A DNA stretch of 64,000 nucleotides, taken from positions 62,001-126,000 of the IMG/VR virus record IMGVR_UViG_3300022866_000322; one strand, written 5' to 3'. The translations under genes were made by a program, and so were the position numbers. This document shows, piece by piece, positions 483 to 60,035 of this stretch. The notes under the pieces were generated by a model, which searched no databases, had not been told where the DNA came from, and saw only the letters and a program-made list of their open reading frames with translations. How positions within the stretch are numbered: the first letter of the stretch is position 1; each line of letters begins with the position of its first letter.

Positions 483-572
483 GGAAGTGTGGCCGAGTGG
501 CTTAAGGCGGGAGATTACTAATCTCTTGTACGTGCAAACGTACCGTGGGTTCGAATCCTACCACTTCCGCCA
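483..572 (+). tRNA. tRNA-Ser, anticodon ACU (unusual A34), long variable arm, encoded CCA
   Basis: Acceptor GGAAGTG/CACTTCC with G73 and CCA; anticodon arm GGAGA-TTACTAA-TCTCT (ACT at 517-519); variable arm GTACG...CGTAC; T loop TTCGAAT. Confidence 0.9.
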
Positions 573-602
573 AATGTTTTAACAAGATACAATGGAGATA
601 GT

Positions 603-758
603 ATGACAGTTAATAAGAAGAACAGCCCATTAACATATGAATCAGGCAAGCTAAGACTCGGTCCATTAAGCACAGGAAAACTAGAAGAAATGTTGAAAAC
701 TTGTAGACCAAGACACAAGAACAAAATTATTAACGAGATAGCAAAGAGAAGTAAATAA
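603..758 (+). CDS. Small basic hypothetical protein (51 aa) between tRNAs
   Basis: GGAGA Shine-Dalgarno at 594-598; MTVNKKNSPLTYESGKLRLGPLSTGKLEEMLKTCRPRHKNKIINEIAKRSK; below the ORF-track cutoff. Confidence 0.6.
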   Translation: MTVNKKNSPLTYESGKLRLGPLSTGKLEEMLKTCRPRHKNKIINEIAKRSK

Positions 759-764
759 ACGCAT

Positions 765-841
765 GCTGGTGTAGCTCAGTTGGTAGTAGCGCCTGCTTTG
801 TAAGCAGGATGTCGGGAGTTCGAGTCTCTCCTCCAGCACCA
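765..841 (+). tRNA. tRNA-Thr(UGU), encoded CCA
   Basis: GCTGGTG...CTCCAGC-A-CCA; anticodon arm CCTGC-TTTGTAA-GCAGG; T arm GGGAG-TTCGAGT-CTCTC. Confidence 0.9.
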
Positions 842-846
842 ACCTT

Positions 847-921
847 GTCCGGTTCGTCTATCGGTTAGGACTCGGGATTTTCATTCCCGCAAGAGGGGTT
901 CGACTCCCCTACCGGATGCCA
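847..921 (+). tRNA. tRNA-Glu(UUC), encoded CCA
   Basis: GTCCGGT...ACCGGAT-G-CCA; anticodon arm CGGGA-TTTTCAT-TCCCG; T arm AGGGG-TTCGACT-CCCCT. Confidence 0.9.
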
Positions 922-3353: not shown

Positions 3354-4511
3354 ATGGCAGAGCTCAACAAAGAGTTCTTCTGCCCAGCTCCCTTTGCAGG
3401 AGGTTATGTTGACGTAAAGAAGATAGCATATCCTTGCTGTAAAATACGTGTAACAGAATTTGAAAATGATCCAGGTTGCGACTTAACTAAAAACAACCTA
3501 TCAACAGCATATCATAGTAAATCTTTTAAAGATCTGAGGGAACAGTTCGAAAACAATGAGAAACCTGATCAATGTCAGGAATGTTGGCGTGCCGAAGACG
3601 CAGGTTGTGAGAGTGAAAGAAATCACCTAACTAAGTTAATCACTACTGATACAAACAGTTTGAATTCGGCTAACGTAGGACTTAAAAAGTTACAAATAGT
3701 GCCGAGTATCACCTGCAATTTCAAATGTAGAATTTGCGACAGTAATTTTAGTTCAGCTATTGCTATGGAAGAAATAAAATTTGCAGAGGCCGCAAATAAA
3801 GAAAAACTTTTATTAAATTTGCAAAATCGCAGTCTAATAGACATAGAATACACTAAAAGAATATTGCAAGACAGTTTATCTGGTTTGACAATGTTACAAG
3901 TATTGGGTGGCGAGCCGACACTGATGAAAAACTTGCCAGAGCTACTAGAGTATATAATTGCACAAGGAGATCACAAACACATAGACCTTGCAATTAACAC
4001 CAATGGCAGTATTTGGTCTGACCGTTTAACGGAAATACTACAAAAATTTAAAAGTTGTAAAATGCTAATTAGCATAGATGCTTTTGGTAAAAGATTTGAA
4101 GATCAACGTGGGGGTTGTTGGCAAGATATTGAAGATAATTTCGACAGATGGTTGACTGTTCCAAACGTTTCTGTAATAATAACAGCAACAGTCAGCATAC
4201 AAAATGTATTATATGTAGATGAAATTGTAGACTTTGTAAAAAGTAAAGGAGTTTTTGTAGGTTGGAATTATGTAGATGACCCTAGTGAATTATCCATAGA
4301 TAACTTAACACAGACGGCAAAAGACTTGGTATACTTGAAGTACATAAATCACGAATCTAACGAGTTGCATGGTATTGCTACTCGGGTAATGCAAACTCCA
4401 GCAGTGTCTGGACAGAAATTTATTAGCCTAATGGACCTTTACGATTTACGTAGAGGTACTAACTTTAAACAATCACATGGAGAGATATATGATGCAATGT
4501 CAGCTAAGTAG
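3354..4511 (+). CDS. Radical SAM protein with N-terminal twitch/SPASM-like Cys cluster
   Basis: CNFKCRIC (CX3CX2C), LGGEPTL, NTNG; N-terminal CPAPF...YPCC...QCQECW. Confidence 0.85.
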   Translation: MAELNKEFFCPAPFAGGYVDVKKIAYPCCKIRVTEFENDPGCDLTKNNLSTAYHSKSFKDLREQFENNEKPDQCQECWRAEDAGCESERNHLTKLITTDTNSLNSANVGLKKLQIVPSITCNFKCRICDSNFSSAIAMEEIKFAEAANKEKLLLNLQNRSLIDIEYTKRILQDSLSGLTMLQVLGGEPTLMKNLPELLEYIIAQGDHKHIDLAINTNGSIWSDRLTEILQKFKSCKMLISIDAFGKRFEDQRGGCWQDIEDNFDRWLTVPNVSVIITATVSIQNVLYVDEIVDFVKSKGVFVGWNYVDDPSELSIDNLTQTAKDLVYLKYINHESNELHGIATRVMQTPAVSGQKFISLMDLYDLRRGTNFKQSHGEIYDAMSAK

Positions 4512-36279: not shown

Positions 36280-36744
36280 ATGAAACTATCAAAGAACTTT
36301 TCACTTCAAGAATTTACAAAATCACAAACAGCACTAAGACAAGGCATTGACAATACACCCAATGACGAACATTTAAAAGCCGCCCAGGGACTATTTGAAA
36401 ACGTGGTACAAAAAGTTAGAGATAACTTTGGTCCTACTGTTATCAACAGTGGCTATCGTGGCCAAGCCTTAAATGAAGCAGTAGGTGGAAGCAGTCGTTC
36501 ACAGCATTGCAAAGGTGAAGCGGTGGATATCGAAGTTCCTGGTGTGCCAAACGCAGAAGTTGCACAATGGATCGTGGACAACACAGACTTTGACCAAGTG
36601 ATCCTGGAGTTTTACACACCAGGTATTCCTGATTCAGGTTGGGTACATGTAAGTTATAACTCAAAGACTTTTCAACGTAAAAGCATTCTCACAGCACTAA
36701 AAGAAGATGGTAAAACTGTGTACAAGCAAGGGTTAGTTACGTAA
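36280..36744 (+). CDS. Peptidase M15A endolysin candidate
   Basis: LSKNFSLQEFTKS, INSGYR, SQHCKGEAVD, WVHVS zinc-peptidase motifs. Confidence 0.88.
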   Translation: MKLSKNFSLQEFTKSQTALRQGIDNTPNDEHLKAAQGLFENVVQKVRDNFGPTVINSGYRGQALNEAVGGSSRSQHCKGEAVDIEVPGVPNAEVAQWIVDNTDFDQVILEFYTPGIPDSGWVHVSYNSKTFQRKSILTALKEDGKTVYKQGLVT

Positions 36745-36745
36745 C

Positions 36746-37432
36746 ATGAATACTGTTATAGTAGAACCTAACGCATATACAGGTTCTTACCTGGTGCAAA
36801 CCATTGCCTTAAACTTAACACAACCGGATTTATCAATGAAGTCTGTCAGTGAGGAACTTGAAGATATATTTGATAACTCGAGTAGACATTTTGTTAACAA
36901 CATGATAAGTCTACACATAGAAGAAAGATGGTTAAATCGTGTTCTTGTATCAGTTGACAATTTATCTATTTTGCGCACAAGACTCTTAACCAAACTTACC
37001 GAAGAAAATTTTAAAGTTTTATACATCACATACGAAAAAGATGATATAATTGCGCTGAGAAAAAAAAGGCACACAGTAGAAAAATTAGATGATTTTGATA
37101 TAGAGAAACATCTGTCAGCGATGTCAGAAAAGATGTATAATTTTTGTAGGGCAGATAGTCATCCAACCTGGGAAGAATTCAAGGCCGGAGATATTCATCC
37201 AGAATTTTTATGTAACCCCAATGACGTTGATATAGTCAACGATCCGTTAAGTGATTGGGTGTATGATGTACCAAGTAAGAACGAGCTTTGTCACGAAATT
37301 AAATTTAATAGCATTTTAAATGGTTATGATATCGTTAATGACATAGCAAATTTTTTAAAAGTAAAAAACATAACAGATCAAAAATCTCTATTAGACGAAT
37401 ATAGAGAAAAATTTTTCGAAGTAGACTATTAG
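36746..37432 (+). CDS. Hypothetical protein
   Basis: EPNAYTGSYLVQTI N-terminus resembles the P-loop-like family at 27-33 kb. Confidence 0.6.
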   Translation: MNTVIVEPNAYTGSYLVQTIALNLTQPDLSMKSVSEELEDIFDNSSRHFVNNMISLHIEERWLNRVLVSVDNLSILRTRLLTKLTEENFKVLYITYEKDDIIALRKKRHTVEKLDDFDIEKHLSAMSEKMYNFCRADSHPTWEEFKAGDIHPEFLCNPNDVDIVNDPLSDWVYDVPSKNELCHEIKFNSILNGYDIVNDIANFLKVKNITDQKSLLDEYREKFFEVDY

Positions 37433-37441
37433 GATAAAATT

Positions 37442-37948
37442 ATGTTAGGAACAGCAAAGTCAGTAGGATTTATCATTAAGTTAGTTCTTATACTACTCAT
37501 CCTGGGTGGTATTGGGTACGGCTTGTGGTATGTAACAGGACTGCGAGCTAATCTTGCTGTAAGCCAAGAAAACGGCCGCAAGATGGAACAGGCAATGCAG
37601 GAACAGCAAGAAGCAATAGCACAGATGCAACGTGAAGCAGAACAAATAAAAGAAATTAACAAAGATCTTGATACTAAGATCAAAGCACAACAAGCAGACT
37701 ATAAAACACTAGAAAATAAGTTTGAAACAACAAAGAGTGGCAAGAAGCGTGACTTTGGCGGAACAGCAGTTAAAAAGCCAGGGCTTGTTGAAAGGGCCAT
37801 CAACAACGGATCACTGGATGCTATGAGATGTTTAGAAATAGCGTCAGGTGGTACATTAACAGAAGCGGAGAAAAATGCTACAAAGAAAAGCAAATCAAAC
37901 AGTATTTGCCCGAGTTTGGCAAATCCCAACTATACTCCTCCTCGTTAG
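37442..37948 (+). CDS. Inner-membrane spanin (Rz-like) candidate
   Basis: N-terminal TM, long coiled coil, two C-terminal Cys. Confidence 0.65.
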   Translation: MLGTAKSVGFIIKLVLILLILGGIGYGLWYVTGLRANLAVSQENGRKMEQAMQEQQEAIAQMQREAEQIKEINKDLDTKIKAQQADYKTLENKFETTKSGKKRDFGGTAVKKPGLVERAINNGSLDAMRCLEIASGGTLTEAEKNATKKSKSNSICPSLANPNYTPPR

Positions 37949-38306
37949 TAGTATAGCAGGGTGTGCTACATTTAGTCTCTTTGACAAAGAGCCTGATGTA
38001 AAGCCAATTGAGGTAGTAACCAAGCCGGTAGAAAAAACACCGCTGGATTTACCTATGCCTGACCCATTAAAATTAGAATCAGTGAAATGGCGTATTGTAA
38101 CACCAGAAAACATTGACAAAGTATGGGAAGAGCTTGGCGCAGAAGGCGGCAATGTTGTGCTGTTTGCATTATCAGAAAACGGGTATAAAACACTTAGTCT
38201 AAACTTTGCGCAGATACGTAACTTTATCTTAACGCAGAATGAAATGCTGATAAAATACAAATTGTATTATGAACCACCGAAGAAAGCAGAAGAAGTAGAA
38301 AAATAA
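37875..38306 (+). CDS. Outer-membrane lipoprotein spanin (Rz1-like) candidate
   Basis: Overlaps the 3' end of the upstream gene in another frame; LLLVSSIAGC lipobox; Pro-rich mature region. Confidence 0.65.
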   Translation: MLQRKANQTVFARVWQIPTILLLVSSIAGCATFSLFDKEPDVKPIEVVTKPVEKTPLDLPMPDPLKLESVKWRIVTPENIDKVWEELGAEGGNVVLFALSENGYKTLSLNFAQIRNFILTQNEMLIKYKLYYEPPKKAEEVEK

Positions 38307-38330
38307 AAATATGAAAAGGAGCTTAACACA

Positions 38331-39107
38331 ATGGCCACCAAACCATTACTACAGGAAACGATACCACAGCGTTCGTTAATATTTGCACAACTAGCACAAA
38401 TCGCCTACGACGAGCTTGCAGATGCAAAGAAAAAAGCCAGGAAACTGGGCTTTACCACAGTAGAATTTTACGACTTTGACGGTGCGCAGGCTTATCGTTT
38501 TCAAAACAAACACGACTTAGTTATTGCTTGTCGCGGCACACAGCCAACAGAATTTAACGACATCAAAGCAGACCTACGTGCGTTGCCTATCATGGCAGAG
38601 ACCATTGGGCGTGTACACAAAGGCTTTAAGAAAGAAGTAGACGAGCTTTGGCCAATGATACTAGAAGATATCAGTCGCACAGTTAACACAAACAATACAC
38701 TGTGGTTTTGTGGACATAGCCTAGGAGCCGCAATGGCAACCATCATGGCGTCAAGGTGTTTTTATGAGCGTAACATACAAAACCCATACGAGTTATACAC
38801 ATATGGTTCACCACGGGTAGGATGGCGCAAGTATGTTAAAACACTAGGAGTAAAACACATACGTTGGCAAAACAACAACGATATTGTTACTCGTGTGCCA
38901 CTATGGTGTATGGGATATGTACACCACGGTGAAAGACACTACATGAACGCATACGGCCAAGTACGCAATCCGTCAGGATGGCAACTTGTAAAAGATCGCT
39001 TCCGCGGCATGTGGATGGGACTTAAACAAGGCAAAATAGACAACTTTGGAGATCATTCAATGGTTGAGTATGTTGCCAACTTAGAAAACTATAACAAGAA
39101 CATATAA
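38331..39107 (+). CDS. Lipase, class 3 (alpha/beta hydrolase)
   Basis: IACRGT, GRVHKGF, GHSLGAA (GxSxG), TYGSPRVG, NDIVTRVP, DHSM. Confidence 0.9.
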   Translation: MATKPLLQETIPQRSLIFAQLAQIAYDELADAKKKARKLGFTTVEFYDFDGAQAYRFQNKHDLVIACRGTQPTEFNDIKADLRALPIMAETIGRVHKGFKKEVDELWPMILEDISRTVNTNNTLWFCGHSLGAAMATIMASRCFYERNIQNPYELYTYGSPRVGWRKYVKTLGVKHIRWQNNNDIVTRVPLWCMGYVHHGERHYMNAYGQVRNPSGWQLVKDRFRGMWMGLKQGKIDNFGDHSMVEYVANLENYNKNI

Positions 39108-39120
39108 AGGAGATAAGTAA

Positions 39121-39465
39121 ATGGCAGATAAGAAAACAGTTACAATCGATTCAGATCTAGCGACTAAATTGGACGCTAACGGAGACGGACACATCTCCGC
39201 AGAAGAAATGGCAATGGATCTTGAATTTAAACGCAAGCGTTTAGAAGATGCAGATGCAATGCGTGACGCACAACGTAACATGGCATGGTTTGCACTATTT
39301 GGAATGTTGTTGTATCCATTCTCAGTAGTCATTGCTGAATTGATTGGTCTTGGCAAGGCCAGCGGAGTGTTGGGCGATATGGCTCCAACATACTTTGTTT
39401 CAGTTGCCGCTATTGTTGCTGCCTTTTATGGCAAGAGTGCGTTTGAGAGCAAAAACACAAAATAG
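39121..39465 (+). CDS. EF-hand plus 2-TM membrane protein (holin-like candidate)
   Basis: Canonical EF-hand DANGDGHISAEE followed by two hydrophobic helices; AAGGAG SD. Confidence 0.65.
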   Translation: MADKKTVTIDSDLATKLDANGDGHISAEEMAMDLEFKRKRLEDADAMRDAQRNMAWFALFGMLLYPFSVVIAELIGLGKASGVLGDMAPTYFVSVAAIVAAFYGKSAFESKNTK

Positions 39466-39474
39466 GAGGCCTAA

Positions 39475-39660
39475 ATGGCAGGACGTAAGGACATTGTATA
39501 TCTAATACCAGAAGGTGAAACTCGAAGTAGTCACACGTATCACTATACTTTACAAAAGACTAAGAACTTAAAAAGTCAAAAAGTAAAGTTTCGCAAGTAT
39601 AACCCTGTTAAGCGCAAGCATGAAATGTTTGTGGAAGTAAAGGCACCGGGACACAACTAG
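39475..39660 (+). CDS. rpmG: Ribosomal protein bL33 homologue (Cys-free type)
   Basis: IVYLI...HTYHYTLQK...KVKFRKYNPVKRKHEMFVEVK matches the L33 pattern (K/R)K(Y/F)DPxxRxHxx(F/Y)xExK; GGAGG SD. Confidence 0.75.
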   Translation: MAGRKDIVYLIPEGETRSSHTYHYTLQKTKNLKSQKVKFRKYNPVKRKHEMFVEVKAPGHN

Positions 39661-39670
39661 TAACACAACA

Positions 39671-39702
39671 GGGCAAGTCTTAGTTGACTATGCCCTGTTT
39701 TT
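39671..39702 (+). terminator. Probable intrinsic terminator overlapping a promoter
   Basis: GGGCA-AGTC...GACT-A-TGCCC hairpin followed by TGTTTTT. Confidence 0.6.
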
Positions 39703-39712
39703 ATAATATAAT
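39684..39712 (+). promoter_or_regulatory. sigma70 promoter
   Basis: TTGACT, 17 nt, TATAAT. Confidence 0.8.
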
Positions 39713-39721
39713 AGTATCTTA

Positions 39722-39826
39722 ATGAAAATGCAGACACAAATAAAACTCCTGTTATGGCTAGTAATAGCCTTTATGTCGCTAGGATTAAGTTTTATACTCT
39801 GGTTATTATATAAGATACTTTCATGA
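39722..39826 (+). CDS. 34-aa single-TM peptide
   Basis: MKMQTQIKLLLWLVIAFMSLGLSFILWLLYKILS; stop overlaps the next start (ATGA). Confidence 0.55.
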   Translation: MKMQTQIKLLLWLVIAFMSLGLSFILWLLYKILS

Positions 39827-40662
39827 CCCATTATCAAACACTAGGCGTAGCAGAAAATACCTCCCAAGATGATATCAAAAAAGCATATCGCAAACTCGCG
39901 ATGCAACATCATCCTGACCGCAATAATGGTGACGATACAAAATTCAAAGAAATACAAATTGCATACGATGCTGTAGGTGACGAACAAAAACGTCAGCAGT
40001 ATGACATGCAAAGACAAAATCCAGGTGGCATTAGGTTTAACATCAATAATGGACAACATCCAGACATTGATGAGATGTTGCGTAACTTTGGCTTTGGGTT
40101 TGCAAGAGGGCAAGATCCTTTTAGTGGTTTTAAGCAACCTAGAAAGAATAAAGACCTACGAGTAGAATTAGTAGTGCCGTTAAGTAGTACACTAGACGCA
40201 CAAACTAAGACAATAAGTGTGCAAACAACCAATGGCCAAAGGCAAACGGTTAATGTAAAACTTCCTAGAGGAATAGTACCCGGAAGCACTATTAAATACC
40301 CACAACTAGGCGATAGTTTTTTTGAACAGTTGCCACAAGGTGATTTATACATCCAAGTGCAAGTGCAAAACGACACAGACTTTGCTGTCAATGGGTTAGA
40401 CTTGTACAACGCCATTGACATAAATGCAATAGATGCTATAATAGGTACTAAGATAAGTGTTACAAGTATAAGTGGCAAAACATTTGAAATGAACATCCCT
40501 GCAGGTACACAGCATGGCAAGAAGTTTAAGATTCCCAGCAACGGGCTGTATACAATGAATCAATCTAGTAGGGGAAGTTTGATAATAGTTATTAACATAG
40601 TTATTCCGACAGATTTAACTGGTGAGCAACTGCAAACTTTACGCACAATCAATAACCTTTAG
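39823..40662 (+). CDS. J-domain chaperone (DnaJ/CbpA-like, no zinc finger)
   Basis: HYQTLGV...IKKAYRKLAMQHHPDRN (HPD motif); C-terminal GDLYI, GTQHG, GSLII. Confidence 0.92.
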   Translation: MTHYQTLGVAENTSQDDIKKAYRKLAMQHHPDRNNGDDTKFKEIQIAYDAVGDEQKRQQYDMQRQNPGGIRFNINNGQHPDIDEMLRNFGFGFARGQDPFSGFKQPRKNKDLRVELVVPLSSTLDAQTKTISVQTTNGQRQTVNVKLPRGIVPGSTIKYPQLGDSFFEQLPQGDLYIQVQVQNDTDFAVNGLDLYNAIDINAIDAIIGTKISVTSISGKTFEMNIPAGTQHGKKFKIPSNGLYTMNQSSRGSLIIVINIVIPTDLTGEQLQTLRTINNL

Positions 40663-40676
40663 CACTAAATATTTTT

Positions 40677-42944
40677 ATGTTACAAACAAATCCTGAAATA
40701 GACTATGTAGTACAAGAAGCAACAAAACTAGCAAAGAGCTACGAGCATGAATACATCACAGTAGAACATGTAATGTTAGCCATGATTAGATACGAGCCGC
40801 TATGCGTTCTGTTTGAAAAATCTCAAATCGATGTAAAAACAATAGATGCAGATTTAAGCCTTTATATTTCTGAACAAGAAGATTTAGTGGTCCAAGGTTG
40901 TGAACCAAGAAAAACACATGCGCTCGAAAGAGTATTTAACAGAGCTTTGACTCAACTATTGTTTAGCGGGCGCACACAGCTACAGTTAATGGACTTGCTG
41001 TTAAGTATACAATCAGAAACAAATAGTTTTGCACAGTACTTTGCTGTAAAGCACGGGCTGACACGTGAAAAAATGTTAGAACTGTTTGCACTTGTTAATG
41101 CAGATGGCGAAAATAAGAAAGTAGTTAATGCAAGCAAAGCAGAAAGAATTTTAGAACACTATTGTGACAACCTTAACAAAAAGGTAGCAGAAGGAAAGAT
41201 AGACCCTGTCATTGGCAGAGAATTTGAGACAAACGAGATCATAGAAGTTATGGCTCGTAAGAATAAAAATAATGTGTTACTAATTGGAGATCCGGGTGTA
41301 GGCAAGACTGCAATTGCAGAAGGGCTTGCACTAGCAATCGAAGCAAATACTGTTCCGGAGTTCTTACAAGGTTACGTTGTTTACAATCTTGACATAGGCT
41401 CGTTGCTTGCTGGTAGCAGGTACAGAGGAGACTTTGAAGAAAAAGTACAAGAAGTTATTAAAGCCTTAACTGTTAAAGGGAAGGCAATACTGTTCATTGA
41501 TGAAGCACACCAAATGAAAGGTGCAGGCTCTACAGGGGCAAACGCAAGTGTAGATTTCAGTAACATGATAAAGCCTGCGATCGGCAAAGGCAAGATCAAA
41601 GTAATGGCTTCTACAACGTGGGAAGAGTATTCAAATAGTTTCGAAAAGGATCGTGCATTGATGCGCAGATTCCAGCGTATTACTGTTGATGAGCCTACAG
41701 CAGAAGTAGCAAAAGAAATACTTACAGGGCTGAAAAGTGTATTTGAAAAGTTCCATGGTGGTACAGTAACAAATGCTTCAATTGATGCGGCCGTTGATCT
41801 TAGTGTCAGATACCAAACAGATAAAAAACTGCCAGACAAGGCAATTGATTTAATCGACAGCACATGTGCCAGGTTAAAACTTAGCACTGCTATTTGGACA
41901 GTTACTAGAGCTGATATTATTGACAGCATTGCTAAGATGACTAAGATTCCTGCTGACCAAATTGGAAACCAGAAAGCAATTGTCAACTTCGAAGCGATTA
42001 TAAAAGAAAAACTGTACGGACAGGATCAAGCAGTTGACACTGTATTGGAAAAAATATATGTAAGTAGAGCTGGCTTGAAAGCAATTAACAAGCCCGTTGG
42101 TAGTTTCTTGTTTACAGGACCAACAGGCACAGGCAAAACAGAACTTGCTAAACTGTTAGCAGAAAACCTAGGCATGAAGTTATTACGTTACGACATGAGC
42201 GAATACCAAGAACGTCACACTGTAGCAAAGTTAGTTGGCGCACCTCCAGGGTACGTAGGCTACGATGACGGAAACTTAGGTGGTGGTATGCTTATTAGTG
42301 ATATCGAAAAGAATCCAAACAGTGTTATATTAATGGATGAGATAGAAAAAGCACATCCAGACGTTACTAATGTGCTATTGCAGATGATGGATGAAGGAAT
42401 GATTACCTCAAGCAACGGTAAGAAAGCAAATTGTCGTAACACAGTTATTATCCTTACCAGTAACCTGGGTGCCGCAGACAACGAAAATAACACAATAGGC
42501 TTTGGTGACGAACTACAAAAAACAGGCGAGGATGACAAAGCAGTTAAGAAGTACTTTGCTCCTGAATTTAGGAATAGACTAGACGGGACTGTGAAGTTCA
42601 AGAAACTTGACGAACTAAGCATGCGTAAGATCGTAACAAAGTATCTAGTAGAAATTAATGATTTACTACTAGATAAAAATCTAAAGGTTAAACTTACAGA
42701 ACCAGCAATAGGTGAACTTGTTGAACAAGGATTTGATCCCAAGATGGGAGCAAGGCCATTGCAACGCAAAATGAACGAAGAAATAAAAGTTCCATTGAGT
42801 AAAAAAATGTTGTTTGAGCCCATTGTGCCCGGTAGCATTATAACTGTAGACTTTCGAGATGATAAATTTACCTTTATTGTAGACTCACCAGAAAACACAA
42901 CACACAAAGTAGACGATGATGGATTTATTATACTGGAAGAATAG
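40677..42944 (+). CDS. clpA: ATP-dependent Clp protease ATP-binding subunit ClpA
   Basis: N-domain HEYITVEH; GDPGVGKT and GPTGTGKT Walker A motifs; IGF loop (NTIGFG); GARPLQR. Confidence 0.92.
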   Translation: MLQTNPEIDYVVQEATKLAKSYEHEYITVEHVMLAMIRYEPLCVLFEKSQIDVKTIDADLSLYISEQEDLVVQGCEPRKTHALERVFNRALTQLLFSGRTQLQLMDLLLSIQSETNSFAQYFAVKHGLTREKMLELFALVNADGENKKVVNASKAERILEHYCDNLNKKVAEGKIDPVIGREFETNEIIEVMARKNKNNVLLIGDPGVGKTAIAEGLALAIEANTVPEFLQGYVVYNLDIGSLLAGSRYRGDFEEKVQEVIKALTVKGKAILFIDEAHQMKGAGSTGANASVDFSNMIKPAIGKGKIKVMASTTWEEYSNSFEKDRALMRRFQRITVDEPTAEVAKEILTGLKSVFEKFHGGTVTNASIDAAVDLSVRYQTDKKLPDKAIDLIDSTCARLKLSTAIWTVTRADIIDSIAKMTKIPADQIGNQKAIVNFEAIIKEKLYGQDQAVDTVLEKIYVSRAGLKAINKPVGSFLFTGPTGTGKTELAKLLAENLGMKLLRYDMSEYQERHTVAKLVGAPPGYVGYDDGNLGGGMLISDIEKNPNSVILMDEIEKAHPDVTNVLLQMMDEGMITSSNGKKANCRNTVIILTSNLGAADNENNTIGFGDELQKTGEDDKAVKKYFAPEFRNRLDGTVKFKKLDELSMRKIVTKYLVEINDLLLDKNLKVKLTEPAIGELVEQGFDPKMGARPLQRKMNEEIKVPLSKKMLFEPIVPGSIITVDFRDDKFTFIVDSPENTTHKVDDDGFIILEE

Positions 42945-43644
42945 AGCTAGTCAGACAGAAATTCTGTCTACACACAAGAAGTTTTACAAGGCGTTCTTGT
43001 ACAAAATGACTGTGTTTGCTCCTGGATGTCGTAGTATACTATGTCCGGACATTGCAGGAAGTTTAAAAAGCAGAAAAGAACTGGTAATAGGTCACTACAA
43101 CTACGGTGGTAGTTGGTACAGTCCAAAAGTGCAAGAATGGGTTAGTCAAGCAGATATAACTCAGTTAAAAACGCTACAAGAAATGAGGATGCGCAGTCAC
43201 TCACACAATATTAAAGTGCGTGTCGAGGAACCATACGTGGACATTTATGCATGCACTGAGGAAAAGTTAAAAGAGCTGTGTGAACTGCTGGATAACCCCA
43301 GTTCAGTTAAAAGCGTTAGTGGTCCACAGAGCAAACAAGCAGAAACGCTACTTGTTGACAACAAGATCTTACGAAAACGTAAGCCCAAGTGGCGTTACAA
43401 AATTGCCCTCAAGGATAAAAAATTCAGCAAAGACATCAAAGAATCTATATGGAATTATCTATTAGGGATCGGTGAGGAAATACACATGCCAAACATGGCA
43501 CAACACCAGTTAACCAAAGATCACGAATGGATTTGGGGTTGTTATTTTTACACTAACGATTCTGGCGTTGTGAATATGTTAAGATTAATTGACCCAGACA
43601 TGGTTAGAGAAGTTTCCGAGATGGTACAAGTAGGTGATAAATAG
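42916..43644 (+). CDS. Hypothetical protein
   Basis: Long coupled ORF. Confidence 0.7.
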   Translation: MMDLLYWKNRASQTEILSTHKKFYKAFLYKMTVFAPGCRSILCPDIAGSLKSRKELVIGHYNYGGSWYSPKVQEWVSQADITQLKTLQEMRMRSHSHNIKVRVEEPYVDIYACTEEKLKELCELLDNPSSVKSVSGPQSKQAETLLVDNKILRKRKPKWRYKIALKDKKFSKDIKESIWNYLLGIGEEIHMPNMAQHQLTKDHEWIWGCYFYTNDSGVVNMLRLIDPDMVREVSEMVQVGDK

Positions 43645-43664
43645 TTAAAATTAAGGAAACAACA

Positions 43665-43829
43665 ATGGCTAAAGTACATGAAGAAGTTTTAGTTATCACC
43701 GTAAGCAAACTAGTAAAAGATGACACGACCCCTGAATCAGTTGTAAGTGCAGACATACAAACACAATTAGCAGAAGTTGCAGAACAGTTACTAGGCGAAG
43801 GTGTAATAGTTGAAGTAAGCAAAGCATAA
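43665..43829 (+). CDS. Small hypothetical protein (54 aa)
   Basis: ATAAATA at 43637, AAGGA SD; MAKVHEEVLVITVSKLVKDD...VEVSKA; missed by the ORF track. Confidence 0.7.
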   Translation: MAKVHEEVLVITVSKLVKDDTTPESVVSADIQTQLAEVAEQLLGEGVIVEVSKA

Positions 43830-43858
43830 ATTTAATACAATCAAATAGAAAGAGTTCA

Positions 43859-44815
43859 ATGGCAAAAAAGAAACCAGGAAAGTCCTCACAGGCTAGTGCG
43901 GTTGCGGCAATCAAAGCGGCAGCCGAGAAGCCAGCAACATCCTCCCCACAGGCTAATGCAGTAGACATGATCAAAGCGGCAGCCGCTAAACGTCAAGAAG
44001 AACAACAGCAACAACAAGTTAACAGTGCAGTTCCACAAGGACAGCAGTTTGACTTTTCGAAATGTCATCTGCACATTGGTATTCCCTGTTATGGTGGAAT
44101 GGTAAGTGAACCCACTATGACAAGTTTGTTAAGATTTATTCTACTTGCACAACAGGCAGGACTTAACTGGTCTCTAGATACCATGGTTAACGAGTCATTA
44201 GTAACACGAGCACGTAACAACTTGATGGCCAAAATGATGACCAACAAGAGTGCTACACACTTTATGTTTATCGATGCTGATATTAGATTCCAGCCAGAGT
44301 CCATTCTACAAATGATGGCTTGCAACAAAGAAGTTATTGGCGGACTGTATCCTAAGAAAGCATTGCCGGTAAACTATGTAATTAACCTTAAGCCTGAAAC
44401 CAAAGTACAAGGCGATGTCTTTACTGTGGACACAATGGGCACTGGTTTCTTATTATTCAAGAAAGAAGTATACCAGAAGTTATGTGATGCGCATCCAGAA
44501 TGCAAGTACGTTGATGACGTTGGATTAGGTAAGCAATTTGAACCTACCATGTACAGTATCTTTGACTGTAAAATTGACGAAAAAGGACACTACCTCAGTG
44601 AGGACTGGTTGTTCTGTAGACGTTGGTCAGCAATTGGTGGTGAGATTTGGGCACACGGTAAAGTGTTGCTTAACCATATTGGACACTATGAATTTACAGG
44701 TGATCTCAGCAAGATGCCAGACTTTGCTAGGAATGAACACGTGCCAGGTGGTGGAGTGTTAAACGATGCTATCGATATGGCCAGCAGGGGTCAAAAGGCA
44801 ACAATTAACGGATAA
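43859..44815 (+). CDS. GT-A glycosyltransferase-like protein
   Basis: IGIPCYGG, NESLVTRARN, FMFIDADI (DxD), LSEDWLFC; low-complexity A/Q-rich N-terminus. Confidence 0.75.
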   Translation: MAKKKPGKSSQASAVAAIKAAAEKPATSSPQANAVDMIKAAAAKRQEEQQQQQVNSAVPQGQQFDFSKCHLHIGIPCYGGMVSEPTMTSLLRFILLAQQAGLNWSLDTMVNESLVTRARNNLMAKMMTNKSATHFMFIDADIRFQPESILQMMACNKEVIGGLYPKKALPVNYVINLKPETKVQGDVFTVDTMGTGFLLFKKEVYQKLCDAHPECKYVDDVGLGKQFEPTMYSIFDCKIDEKGHYLSEDWLFCRRWSAIGGEIWAHGKVLLNHIGHYEFTGDLSKMPDFARNEHVPGGGVLNDAIDMASRGQKATING

Positions 44816-45338: not shown

Positions 45339-46241
45339 ATGTTTATTGCTAATTTATTTGAAAACTATGTAAAAGAGAACAACGGCCCGGAAGTGGTAGT
45401 GGTATATCCAGGCCGTTTTCAACCTTTTCACTTAGGACACAAAGAAGTGTTTAACTCACTCCAAAACAAATTTGGACGTGATAATGTTTATATTGCAACC
45501 AGCAACAAAACAGACGGCGCTAAAAGCCCATTTAACTTTTCCGACAAAACCATATTCATGAATGCGGCTGGTGTACCTAGTGATCGCATTATAGAAGTTT
45601 CAAACCCATACGCTTTACCCCAGCAATTCAACCCAGAAAATACTATCTTTGTTGCAGTAGTAGGTAGTCCCGACAAGAATAGACTCAATCCAGATTCAAC
45701 TAAAAAAGACGGTTCGCCAAGTTATTTCAAGATGTTTGATAGTTTTGAAAAAGCTGAAACCGCAGATCGACATGGCTATGTAATCATTGCAGACGAACGC
45801 AATAAACAGATCACCTTAGGTGACGAAACTGTCGATGTTAGCCACGGCACACAGACTAGAGCCGCTTGGAACGCAGTTAGAAAAGATCCGAAACTGCGTT
45901 CCCAATTTTTAAAACAAATGTATGGCAGAGACGATCCAGAAGTTGGTCGTGTACTGGATAAGATTACCGAAACAGTGAATGAGATGGGTGGTGTAGGTGT
46001 AATTGCAAGCAAAGGGCAAGCAAAAGATCCACGCTATAGTATGAGCTTAACCAAAGACATTAGACCAGGTGAAACCAATAGACAGTTAGCGAAGATGGGA
46101 CTGGGCGCAAAAGTCACCAGTCTCGGCGAAGAGATTGCAACACTTAAAGAAAAGTGGAGTGCAAAGTACAAGAAAAGTATCGACTGTAATAACCCTAAGG
46201 GATTTAGTCAAAAAGCACATTGTGCAGGGAAGAAAAAATGA
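45339..46241 (+). CDS. HxGH nucleotidyltransferase fused to short C-terminal basic modules; probable head-packaged protein
   Basis: YPGRFQPFHLGH, SPFNF; C-terminal EKWSAKYKKSIDCNNPKGFSQKAHC module; CTAAATA at 45311. Confidence 0.75.
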   Translation: MFIANLFENYVKENNGPEVVVVYPGRFQPFHLGHKEVFNSLQNKFGRDNVYIATSNKTDGAKSPFNFSDKTIFMNAAGVPSDRIIEVSNPYALPQQFNPENTIFVAVVGSPDKNRLNPDSTKKDGSPSYFKMFDSFEKAETADRHGYVIIADERNKQITLGDETVDVSHGTQTRAAWNAVRKDPKLRSQFLKQMYGRDDPEVGRVLDKITETVNEMGGVGVIASKGQAKDPRYSMSLTKDIRPGETNRQLAKMGLGAKVTSLGEEIATLKEKWSAKYKKSIDCNNPKGFSQKAHCAGKKK

Positions 46242-58469: not shown

Positions 58470-60035
58470 ATGTTATTAGATCTTCTCCGGAAGGTATATG
58501 ATTTTGATATGACCGTAGCGTTAGAAACCATTGCGACTATGCCTTCTTCTTTTTTATACAAAAAGATAAGTCCATTTATTAAACAACAATATCCTAACAA
58601 CTACAAGTTCATATTTTTGAACAACAGTGATGTCAACCAAGAAGTATTACTGCACGTTATACAAACAATAGAATTGTGTAAGATTCCTAATGCATTTGTA
58701 TTGGTCATTACTAATCAAACCAGAGTGCATGATTTTTTTGCAAGTAATAACATTGAAGTTAAAAAAAATAATATTCCTGACGAACTAGAAACAGGGAATT
58801 ACACACCAACTTTTAATGTCCAAGAGAAACTTTGTCCTTATCCGTGGGCTGGCATTCATGTAGAGCCACAAGGTTACGTTAAGCCGTGCTGTGATTTTTA
58901 TGGTTCATACTTAAAGCATAACGGTACTCTATTGGATGCTAGTAAAGATTCGTTTGAATACATGCAAAATTCAAGCGACATGAAATTGATAAGGGAACAG
59001 TTTAGACAAGGCATAAAGCCAGAAGGATGTAAGAAGAACTGTTTAGATGCGCCAGAGGGCAAATCTACCAGGTTTACGCATTCAAAGTACAAGCTGAACA
59101 ATGTATACGGAGAAATAGACTGGGAAGGCGAAGGTGAGATGAAGTTTCTTAACGGACACTTCAGTAACTTGTGCAACCTCGGTTGTGTGATTTGTGAACC
59201 GCGATCTAGTTCGATACTGTCTGTAGAGGAACTTAAAGATTCACAGTACGCCAACATTAAACAAGATCCACGATATAAAAAGTTACAAATCCATCTAAAC
59301 ACATTAGACGAAAACAGCACTATATGGAAAGAACTGGATAAAAATATTTCAACTATACGTAACTTTGAAATATTGGGTGGCGAACCACTGCTAAATAAAA
59401 ATATCTTACGAGTCATCGAAAGATTAATTGATTCAGGGCATAGTAAACATTGTGTTTTTCAAATTATAACCAATGGTACACAATTCCCTGATATATGCAA
59501 CCAGTTACATCACTTTAAAGAGGTATTCATACACATAAGTGTAGACAACACAAACGAGCGATTTGAATATGAACGCTATTTGGGAAAATGGGATAAGTGG
59601 GTAAGTAACGTAAGCCAATTTGATAATTTAACAAAACAACACAATCATATTAAATTACATTTTGCAATAGCAGTAAGTATTTTAAATGCATTGTACTTGC
59701 CAGAACTGTTATCGCATATTTCAAGATACAACTACCAAACATTTTACTTTGGTGATGTACATAAACCGTCTCAGTTATCGTTGAACAACTTGACATTAGA
59801 AGCAAAAGATGTTCTAATAGAAAGACTATCAATGTTTACTGATCAATATCCAAAACTAAATTTTGTGCTGAACTTACTAAAAAATTCTAAACAAGTTGAT
59901 GGAACAGAATTTTGTAACTTTATACAAAACAAAGATAAATTACGAAATTTAAACTTTATGGATACGCATGAGGAAATAGGAAATCTTATGGGATATTCAT
60001 CTTTTAACATTCAAGGAGAAACAAATGGCCGCTAG
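58470..60035 (+). CDS. Radical SAM protein with N-terminal extension and twitch-like domain
   Basis: CPYPW...VKPCC...GCKKNC, CNLGCVIC, LGGEPLL, ITNGT. Confidence 0.85.
   Translation: MLLDLLRKVYDFDMTVALETIATMPSSFLYKKISPFIKQQYPNNYKFIFLNNSDVNQEVLLHVIQTIELCKIPNAFVLVITNQTRVHDFFASNNIEVKKNNIPDELETGNYTPTFNVQEKLCPYPWAGIHVEPQGYVKPCCDFYGSYLKHNGTLLDASKDSFEYMQNSSDMKLIREQFRQGIKPEGCKKNCLDAPEGKSTRFTHSKYKLNNVYGEIDWEGEGEMKFLNGHFSNLCNLGCVICEPRSSSILSVEELKDSQYANIKQDPRYKKLQIHLNTLDENSTIWKELDKNISTIRNFEILGGEPLLNKNILRVIERLIDSGHSKHCVFQIITNGTQFPDICNQLHHFKEVFIHISVDNTNERFEYERYLGKWDKWVSNVSQFDNLTKQHNHIKLHFAIAVSILNALYLPELLSHISRYNYQTFYFGDVHKPSQLSLNNLTLEAKDVLIERLSMFTDQYPKLNFVLNLLKNSKQVDGTEFCNFIQNKDKLRNLNFMDTHEEIGNLMGYSSFNIQGETNGR

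What the first reader, a model, noticed from the sequence alone, without database searches (positions are those of the whole stretch)
39475..39660. Divergent phage ribosomal protein bL33
Seen: a 61-aa basic protein with the L33 C-terminal signature, no zinc-binding Cys, an insertion (PEGETRSS) in the first hairpin, a strong SD and a terminator directly after. Established: some phages encode ribosomal proteins that can enter host ribosomes, and bL33 is surface-exposed near the E site. Inference: late replacement of host L33 to alter or protect ribosomes.
Basis: partly seen in the sequence, partly recalled or inferred. Interest (0 to 1): 0.6.

Follow-up and report, generated by a model that had tools for sequence, protein, structure and literature searches.

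The report
Phage-encoded ribosomal protein bL33, SAR86-type
A large uncultured salt-lake phage carries a real, well-conserved gene for ribosomal protein bL33; phage bL33 genes are already known, but its odd sequence type is shared with many aquatic phages and is the only bL33 of part of the marine SAR86 bacteria.

Summary
The 61-aa ORF at 39475-39660 (+) is as described. It is basic and has no Cys. AGGAGG lies 5 nt before the ATG, and a strong hairpin plus U-tract follows the stop. It is a true bL33 homologue: Pfam and TIGR01023 scores pass their curated cut-offs, and the AlphaFold model's 50 listed PDB matches all lie in ribosome entries, those cross-checked being bL33 chains.

The window belongs to a 221-kb IMG/VR phage record that also encodes bS21.

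The "divergence" is not special to this phage. The longer first hairpin (4 extra residues, IPEGETR motif) and the C-terminal extension define a tight clade. That clade is present in at least 100 viral contigs. It is also the sole bL33 of one part of the SAR86 order, where canonical rpmG is missing from its place after rpmB. Trees put SAR86 next to a subset of phage copies, but the direction of transfer is unresolved (AU p = 0.34).

In phages the gene is under strong purifying selection (dN/dS about 0.05-0.08). It repeatedly sits among chaperone and protease genes (DnaJ, ClpA, Hsp20, ClpS). Ribosome incorporation, timing and host are untested. Phage bL33 was reported in 2019, so this is a new member of a known kind.

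The parts
39464..39469 (+). Shine-Dalgarno AGGAGG, 5 nt before the ATG; overlaps the TAG stop (39463-39465) of the upstream ORF
   Evidence: read directly
39475..39660 (+). bL33 gene (61 aa, P0001), IPEGETR-type variant
   Evidence: dN/dS 0.045-0.075 against close phage copies
39667..39704 (+). intrinsic-terminator-like hairpin plus U-tract directly after the stop
   Evidence: -20.3 kcal/mol, z -4.25
39684..39712 (+). sigma-70-like promoter (TTGACT, 17 nt, TATAAT; 11 of 12) overlapping the 3' arm of the terminator; would drive the 34-aa ORF, DnaJ and ClpA
   Evidence: a consensus match only
39121..39465 (+). upstream ORF, 114 aa, weak EF-hand match and hydrophobic C-terminal half; probably translationally coupled to bL33
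38331..39107 (+). class-3 lipase family protein, first gene of the probable lipase / EF-hand / bL33 unit
   Evidence: promoter-like site at 38229-38256
39823..40662 (+). DnaJ-like co-chaperone (J domain plus DnaJ_C), immediately downstream
   Evidence: the same order L33-DnaJ-ClpA occurs in L002-L008
40677..42944 (+). ClpA/ClpB-type double AAA+ unfoldase (Clp_N, AAA, AAA_2, D2-small)
36280..36744 (+). peptidase M15 (endolysin-like), start of a co-directional lysis-like run upstream

Best explanation
The ORF is a functional phage-borne gene for large-subunit ribosomal protein bL33. It belongs to a distinct 'IPEGETR-type' clade, with a first hairpin 4 residues longer than canonical, a C-terminal extension and no Cys. 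Many uncultured aquatic phages share this clade with one part of the SAR86 bacteria, where it is the only bL33. Shown: family membership, fold, phage context, strong purifying selection, wide spread among phages, and cellular use of the same type. Inferred: during infection the protein is translated from its strong SD site and takes the bL33 position near the E site of host 50S subunits, either in new subunits or by exchange, since bL33 is one of the loosely bound exchangeable proteins. Together with the phage's own bS21 and its DnaJ, ClpA, ClpS and Hsp20 set, it would keep or tune the host's protein-making capacity for phage production. Timing (late) and host are not established.
For: Profile matches pass curated cut-offs, and PDB sequence hits below E = 0.4 are all L33. 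The AF2 model (pLDDT 77, four strands) gives 50 listed Foldseek matches that are all ribosome entries at probability 0.93-1.00 (most 0.99-1.00), TM by target 0.41-0.82 (most 0.6-0.8); the chains that also appear in the sequence search (e.g. 6v39_0, 9i05_Aw, 7unr_5) are named bL33 there. Core residues Y24, K28, K36, K41, P44, E54 and K56 are invariant across variant and canonical L33. Phage context is shown. At least 100 viral contigs carry the type, some next to TerL or gp32/UvsX, and none shares flanking genes with SAR86 loci. dN/dS is 0.043/0.58 and 0.029/0.645. The same type is the sole PF00471 match in four SAR86 genomes, two of them complete chromosomes. It is present in 48 of 121 sampled SAR86-order genomes and never together with the canonical type. 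A second ribosomal protein, bS21, is in the same phage. The gene recurs beside Hsp20/ClpS (12 loci) or DnaJ/ClpA (7 loci). Published precedent: phage bS21 and bL12 enter E. coli 70S, and bL33 is listed among exchangeable proteins enriched in aquatic viruses (PMC6375957).
Against: There is no direct evidence of expression or incorporation. RNA-library contigs of about 90-95% relatives cover the gene, but such libraries can hold DNA. bL33 is dispensable in E. coli (Maguire and Wild 1997, reference 39 in PMC6375957), so a benefit is not self-evident. The host is unknown: phage bS21 and ClpA show no special likeness to SAR86. It is therefore unclear whether the phage protein matches or differs from the host's own bL33. 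No PHROG family and no GenBank phage record matched.
Confidence: 0.7

Rival explanations
1. Recently captured host gene without a role for the phage (a passenger on its way to decay).
For: Ribosomal protein genes can be picked up at random from host DNA (discussion in PMC6375957).
Against: dN/dS is 0.05-0.08 between phage copies whose synonymous sites are about 0.6 diverged. The gene is kept in at least 100 viral contigs of several genome types and contexts. It has an intact SD and terminator.
Confidence: 0.03
2. The protein keeps the L33 fold but works off the ribosome, for example as an RNA-binding regulator or as a decoy for a host factor or defence that senses free bL33.
For: The variant carries extra surface (a hairpin 4 residues longer, a C-terminal extension with invariant Pro and His). 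It sits among chaperone and protease genes rather than translation genes in the window.
Against: The same variant is the only bL33 of many SAR86 genomes that have lost canonical rpmG. This argues that the type is competent as a ribosomal protein. Core residues shared with canonical L33 are invariant.
Confidence: 0.12
3. It is a zinc-independent (Cys-less) substitute that lets ribosomes be built when zinc is scarce, as known for C- paralogues of L31, L33 and L36 in some bacteria.
For: There is no Cys in the protein. The habitat is aquatic and may be metal-poor.
Against: All canonical gammaproteobacterial L33 sequences fetched here are Cys-less too. A gammaproteobacterial host would therefore gain nothing on that score. 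The host is unknown.
Confidence: 0.05
4. The stretch is cellular DNA wrongly joined to, or wrongly called as, a virus.
For: IMG/VR holds some false positives, and the record is linear and 63% complete by CheckV's estimate.
Against: Phage genes lie on both sides within the window. Sixteen salt-lake runs hold 38300-41000 at 0.99-1.00 of sampled words. Related contigs of 141 and 289 kb keep L33-DnaJ-ClpA. No flanking gene is shared with SAR86 chromosomes.
Confidence: 0.02

Closest known systems
Virus-encoded bL33 of uncultivated aquatic viruses (Mizuno et al. 2019, PMC6375957); also listed for huge phages (PMC11748809) and claimed for cyanophage PhiMa05 (PMC13157829, contested in PMC13623518)
   Same: A single small bL33 gene in a tailed-phage genome from an aquatic habitat. 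The same phage also has bS21, the commonest viral ribosomal protein. The proposed role is homologous replacement of an exchangeable ribosomal protein.
   Different: Here the type is defined (IPEGETR hairpin, C-terminal extension) and tied to one cellular lineage. It is counted in at least 100 IMG/VR contigs, against 12 contigs in 2019. Its recurrent neighbours are chaperone and Clp genes. I could not check whether the 2019 contigs are of this type.
Canonical gammaproteobacterial bL33 (rpmG, in the rpmB-rpmG operon; e.g. chains in 6spb, 7unr, 4ybb)
   Same: Same family, fold and size class. It is Cys-less and basic. Residues 21-56 align without gaps, and the core Lys/Pro/Glu positions are invariant.
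   Different: Identity is only 29-37%. The first hairpin is 4 residues longer and both ends are extended. The variant is separated by a very long branch (about 5 changes per column). It is not next to rpmB.
Variant bL33 of SAR86 bacteria (e.g. CP097968.1, OX044367.1; loci L099, L117)
   Same: Same clade (100/100 support), the same insertion and motifs, and 58-64% identity to the window's protein.
   Different: The SAR86 copies have 2 more residues in the second loop, lie in cellular contexts (the gcvT/gcvH side, or MFS/GH17 neighbours), and are the cell's only bL33.
Zinc-free C- paralogues of bL33 in Firmicutes and Actinobacteria (e.g. 9e16, 5xym chains)
   Same: Alternative Cys-less bL33 forms that can stand in for the main form.
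   Different: Those are extra paralogues in cells that also have a Cys-bearing form, and they are Zur-regulated (my knowledge, not tested). Here the background lineage is Cys-less anyway.

Membership tests
bL33 (Pfam PF00471 / TIGR01023 rpmG_bact) | Profile score above the curated cut-off | tested here: met
   PF00471 31.5 bits vs 25; TIGR01023 25.3 vs 23.95. NF001860 at 25.6 is below its 50-bit subfamily cut-off.
bL33 (Pfam PF00471 / TIGR01023 rpmG_bact) | Small four-stranded zinc-ribbon-like fold of L33 | tested here: met
   AF2 pLDDT 77.4 with strands 6-12, 24-28, 38-43 and 48-56. All 50 Foldseek PDB matches listed lie in ribosome entries; those also found by the sequence search are named bL33. 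TM by target is 0.41-0.82, rmsd 2.0-4.1 A, and E-values are only 3e-3 and weaker because the protein is short.
bL33 (Pfam PF00471 / TIGR01023 rpmG_bact) | Conserved core residues of the second half (K..K..K-[FY]-x-P, R-x-H, E-x-K) | tested here: met
   Y24, K28, K36, K41, P44, E54 and K56 are invariant, and T16, R47 and H49 at least 90% conserved, over 41 variant and canonical sequences.
bL33 (Pfam PF00471 / TIGR01023 rpmG_bact) | Serves as the ribosome's bL33 (bound at the 50S E-site region) | not testable with these tools
   Indirect only: the same variant type is the sole L33 match in four SAR86 genomes, and canonical rpmG is gone from the rpmB operon in three of them.
bL33 (Pfam PF00471 / TIGR01023 rpmG_bact) | Usual gammaproteobacterial gene context rpmB-rpmG (typical, not defining) | tested here: not met
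   In the window the gene follows a lipase and an EF-hand protein and precedes DnaJ.
Virus-encoded ribosomal proteins (sense of Mizuno et al. 2019) | Gene lies inside a genuine viral genome, not a cellular contaminant | tested here: met
   IMG/VR record of 221 kb. DNA polymerase phrog_262 at 2.4e-191, tail-fibre and structural PHROGs, and an M15 peptidase. Related loci have TerL and gp32/UvsX. No flanks are shared with cells.
Virus-encoded ribosomal proteins (sense of Mizuno et al. 2019) | Maintained by selection in viruses | tested here: met
   dN/dS 0.045-0.075; 23 invariant columns among 24 family members.
Virus-encoded ribosomal proteins (sense of Mizuno et al. 2019) | Product enters host ribosomes | not tested
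   Shown in the literature only for bS21 and bL12.

The most novel reading that the evidence does not exclude
The IPEGETR-type bL33 evolved in aquatic phages and was then taken up by an ancestor of one part of the SAR86 order, where it displaced the native rpmG. That would be a core ribosomal protein of an abundant ocean bacterium being of viral origin. The facts fit this reading. Canonical-type SAR86-order genomes keep rpmB-rpmG. Variant-type genomes have rpmB without rpmG and carry the variant elsewhere, at different loci in the two subgroups. No genome has both types. In both trees SAR86 is one clade sitting beside a subset of phage sequences, inside a clade otherwise made of phages. The opposite reading fits the same facts: a fast-evolving SAR86 paralogue later captured by phages. 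The AU test does not reject phage monophyly (p = 0.34), and the root inside the clade moves between analyses.
Probability: 0.3. Interest if true: 0.75.

Novelty: new member of a known kind. Interest (0 to 1): 0.45.

Why it matters
Phage-encoded ribosomal proteins blur the line between virus and cell, and their function is still largely untested; bL33 is among the least studied. This case provides a well-defined, abundant and strongly conserved phage bL33 clade that could be expressed and looked for in ribosomes. It shows that the 'strange' features are lineage traits shared with SAR86. It also exposes a clean case of replacement of a ribosomal protein gene in a major uncultured ocean bacterium. 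The sharing is a rare direct genetic link between SAR86 and a large group of uncultured phages, useful for host prediction, though it does not by itself name this phage's host.

Tried and rejected
- PHROGs gave no family for the protein.
- tblastn against 50,697 GenBank phage records gave only chance hits at E >= 3. The type therefore seems confined to uncultured phage contigs.
- DNA search of 36500-44000 against phages gave only short matches of 1-3% coverage (Melnitz, SCTP-2 and others).
- The pattern scan did not flag the terminator; folding did.
- Host signal from other genes was negative. Phage bS21 is 32-41% identical to SAR86-order bS21 but up to 53% to other Gammaproteobacteria. Phage ClpA is 40-43% identical to SAR86 ClpA.
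- bL31 was not found in the phage record.
- Direction of transfer is unresolved. In the careful tree SAR86 is one clade (96/86) grouped with 11 phage sequences (90/82), but the AU test of phage monophyly gave p = 0.339.
- Adding 11 other divergent cellular L33 sequences moved the root. The window's group then became derived rather than basal, so the canonical-length second loop of the window group is not reliable evidence of ancestry.
- Those other divergent gammaproteobacterial L33 sequences have their own hairpin insertions and are not intermediates.
- The large representative-protein search was not run. The operators marked it costly, and no claim here rests on absence of relatives.
- Complex prediction was not used, because bL33 binds rRNA, not a protein partner.
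- No alternative genetic code was used.
- One unpublished genome (G160) was among the 61 and 151 genomes tallied. No specific claim rests on it.

Full report
**Observation**

The ORF at 39475-39660 (+) exists exactly as quoted: 61 aa with an ATG start.
- It is strongly basic (pI 10.1, 14 Lys+Arg), with no Cys and four His.
- AGGAGG sits at 39464-39469, five bases before the ATG. It overlaps the stop codon of the upstream 114-aa ORF, which suggests translational coupling.
- Directly after the stop, bases 39667-39699 form a hairpin followed by a U-run. It folds at -20.3 kcal/mol, z = -4.25, and none of 200 shuffles folds as well.
- A near-consensus sigma-70-type promoter (11 of 12) overlaps the 3' arm of that hairpin and faces the next genes.

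**Identity**

- Pfam Ribosomal_L33 scores 31.5 bits against a cut-off of 25. TIGR01023 (rpmG_bact) scores 25.3 against 23.95.
- A sequence search of the PDB returns only L33 chains below E = 0.4. The best are Pseudomonas and E. coli ribosome chains at E 3.5e-5 and above, aligned without gaps over residues 21-56.
- An AlphaFold model built on a 41-sequence alignment has mean pLDDT 77 and four strands.
- All 50 PDB matches listed by Foldseek lie in ribosome entries, and those also found by the sequence search are named bL33 there. Probability is 0.93-1.00 (most 0.99-1.00). TM by target is 0.41-0.82. The two lowest values come from long mitochondrial chains.

**Is it a phage?**

- The window is bases 62001-126000 of a 221,342-bp IMG/VR virus record, 63% complete by CheckV's estimate.
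- It has dense co-directional ORFs and three tRNA genes. It also encodes a T4-type DNA polymerase (phrog_262, 2.4e-191) and tail-fibre or structural proteins.
- Around the finding lie an M15 peptidase, a class-3 lipase, DnaJ and a ClpA-type unfoldase.
- Sixteen salt-lake metagenome runs hold 38300-41000 at 0.99-1.00 of sampled words.
- Outside the window the same record encodes bS21 (57 bits), followed by Hsp20 and ClpS. bL31 was not found.

**The family**

- A word-based protein search found 145 relatives of 53-94 aa at E values of 2.6e-33 and weaker, mostly from marine metagenomes.
- Twenty-four of them align with 23 invariant columns. These include the motif I-P-E-x-E-x-R-x-x-H-x-Y-H-Y and a C-terminal P-x-H.
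- Against canonical gammaproteobacterial L33 the clade has a first hairpin 4 residues longer, plus N- and C-terminal extensions.
- The window's subgroup keeps the canonical length of the second loop, while the rest have 2 more residues.

**Where the type occurs**

- *Viral contigs.* A scan of IMG/VR found at least 100 viral contigs with it. Two are identical to the window, and contigs of 141 and 289 kb carry a 93% identical copy with the same L33-DnaJ-ClpA order.
- *Other phage contexts.* The gene lies between Hsp20 and ClpS (12 loci), next to a QueD/PTPS gene (9 loci), or two genes after a large terminase. It also occurs in contigs with gp32 and UvsX. bS21 lies within 6 kb in five loci.
- *Bacterial genomes.* A scan of one genome per prokaryote species found 137 relatives. 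The 80 listed are almost all SAR86-cluster Gammaproteobacteria, including the complete chromosomes CP097968.1 and OX044367.1, at 58-63% identity.
- *No shared flanks.* No viral locus shares any flanking gene with the SAR86 loci.

**SAR86**

- In four variant-type SAR86 genomes the variant is the only PF00471 match.
- Among 121 sampled genomes of the SAR86 order, 48 carry the variant and 33 carry only a canonical 51-57-aa L33. None shows both; 40 gave no match.
- Canonical-type genomes have rpmB-rpmG, followed by maf in the one where downstream was read (G007). Variant-type genomes have rpmB with no L33-like ORF within 1.5 kb. In G001 maf follows rpmB directly.
- The variant gene lies elsewhere. 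It is beside gcvT/gcvH in the TMED112-type genomes, and beside an MFS transporter and a cytidylyltransferase-like gene in the SAR86A-type genomes.
- The ancestral gene was therefore replaced, not modified in place.

**Trees**

- In a 110-sequence maximum-likelihood tree the variant type is one clade (100/100) on a very long branch. It is separate from all canonical L33, including the canonical L33 of the SAR86 order.
- SAR86 variant sequences form one clade (96/86) that groups with 11 phage sequences (90/82). The base of the clade is a comb of phage sequences.
- The window's group of eight sequences is a clade (100/98).
- Forcing all phage sequences together costs 9.3 log-likelihood units and is not rejected (AU p = 0.339).
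- When 11 other divergent cellular L33 sequences are added, the root within the clade shifts and the window group becomes derived.
- The direction of transfer between phages and SAR86 is therefore open.

**Function**

- Between the window and its close relatives dN/dS is 0.043/0.58 and 0.029/0.645. The phage gene is under strong purifying selection.
- Because the same type is the only bL33 of many SAR86 cells, it is most likely competent as a ribosomal protein.
- The published frame is that viruses preferentially carry loosely bound, exchangeable ribosomal proteins (bS21, bL12, bL9, bL31, bL33). Phage bS21 and bL12 do enter E. coli 70S ribosomes (PMC6375957).
- The best-supported mechanism is therefore that the phage protein occupies the bL33 site near the E site of host 50S subunits during infection. 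It would act alongside phage bS21 and a phage proteostasis set.
- Incorporation, timing and effect are inferences.
- 'Late' rests only on position. The gene closes a co-directional run that begins with an M15 peptidase and an overlapping pair of ORFs that look like spanins.
- Contigs of about 90-95% identical relatives in marine metatranscriptome libraries cover the gene (X17 39463-39647, X18 39490-40132). Such libraries can hold DNA, so transcription is not shown.

**Host**

The host is unresolved. The shared bL33 type implies gene exchange between this phage group and SAR86 at some time. However, the window's own copy is only 58-64% identical to SAR86 copies. Its bS21 and ClpA show no special likeness to SAR86, and the source is a salt lake.

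**Comparison with what is known**

- Virus-encoded bL33 was reported in 12 aquatic viral contigs in 2019.
- It has since been listed for huge phages and claimed for the cyanophage PhiMa05, a claim now under dispute.
- The finding is thus a new member of a known kind.
- New in this analysis, as far as the searched literature shows, are four points: the definition of the type, its abundance in phages, its recurrent chaperone/Clp neighbourhood, and its identity with the sole bL33 of part of SAR86 after loss of canonical rpmG.

Noticed in passing
G000:C1:12022-13444 (outside the window; locus L205 1453-2878): The same phage record encodes bS21 (82 aa), then an 80-aa ORF, Hsp20 (160 aa) and ClpS (101 aa). 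In 12 other phage loci the bL33 gene sits between the Hsp20 and ClpS homologues.
   Followed up: partly
SAR86 genomes: L198/L196 (canonical type) versus L200/L199/L197 (variant type): Canonical rpmG is missing from its place after rpmB in variant-type SAR86 genomes. In G001 maf follows rpmB directly. The variant bL33 lies at a different locus in the two SAR86 subgroups.
   Followed up: partly
window 37442-37948 and 37875-38306 (+): Two overlapping ORFs downstream of the M15 peptidase. The first has an N-terminal membrane helix and a coiled-coil-like body. The second has a lipoprotein-type signal ending in AGC. This looks like an i-spanin/o-spanin pair, so the run upstream of bL33 may be a lysis cassette. 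Neither has a Pfam match.
   Followed up: no
window 39684-39826: A near-consensus promoter overlaps the terminator of bL33. It is followed by a 34-aa hydrophobic ORF (39722-39826) whose stop overlaps the DnaJ start.
   Followed up: no
window 483-921: Three clustered tRNA genes: Ser-ACT (unusual anticodon as called by ARAGORN), Thr-TGT and Glu-TTC.
   Followed up: no
window 3354-4511 and 58470-60035: Two radical-SAM-family proteins (phrog_14086) in one phage window.
   Followed up: no
L082 (JALRIS010000022.1), L100 (PARR01000002.1), L141 (NYXO01000071.1): A 'Flavobacteriales' MAG contig carries a window-group (phage-type) bL33. 'Rickettsiales' and 'Methanobacteriota' MAG contigs carry SAR86-type bL33. 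These are probably mis-binned contigs.
   Followed up: no
L211-L221 (G159, G161, G157, G147, G166, G141, G180, G126, G156, G162, G154): Other small-genome Gammaproteobacteria have their own divergent bL33 with independent insertions in the first hairpin or in the second hairpin after K-F-D-P. Hairpin insertions in bL33 are therefore recurrent in cells.
   Followed up: partly
window 45339-46241; L117 6200-7303 (-); L153 3854-4969 (-): Cytidylyltransferase-like genes lie a few kb from bL33 both in phages (11 loci have a homologue of the window's gene) and in SAR86A-type genomes. BLASTP at 1e-5 found no homology between the phage and SAR86 copies, so this is probably coincidence.
   Followed up: partly
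L200 700-981 (+): A bL31 gene lies about 0.5 kb upstream of rpmB in the variant-type SAR86 genome G001, with dut on the opposite strand between them.
   Followed up: no
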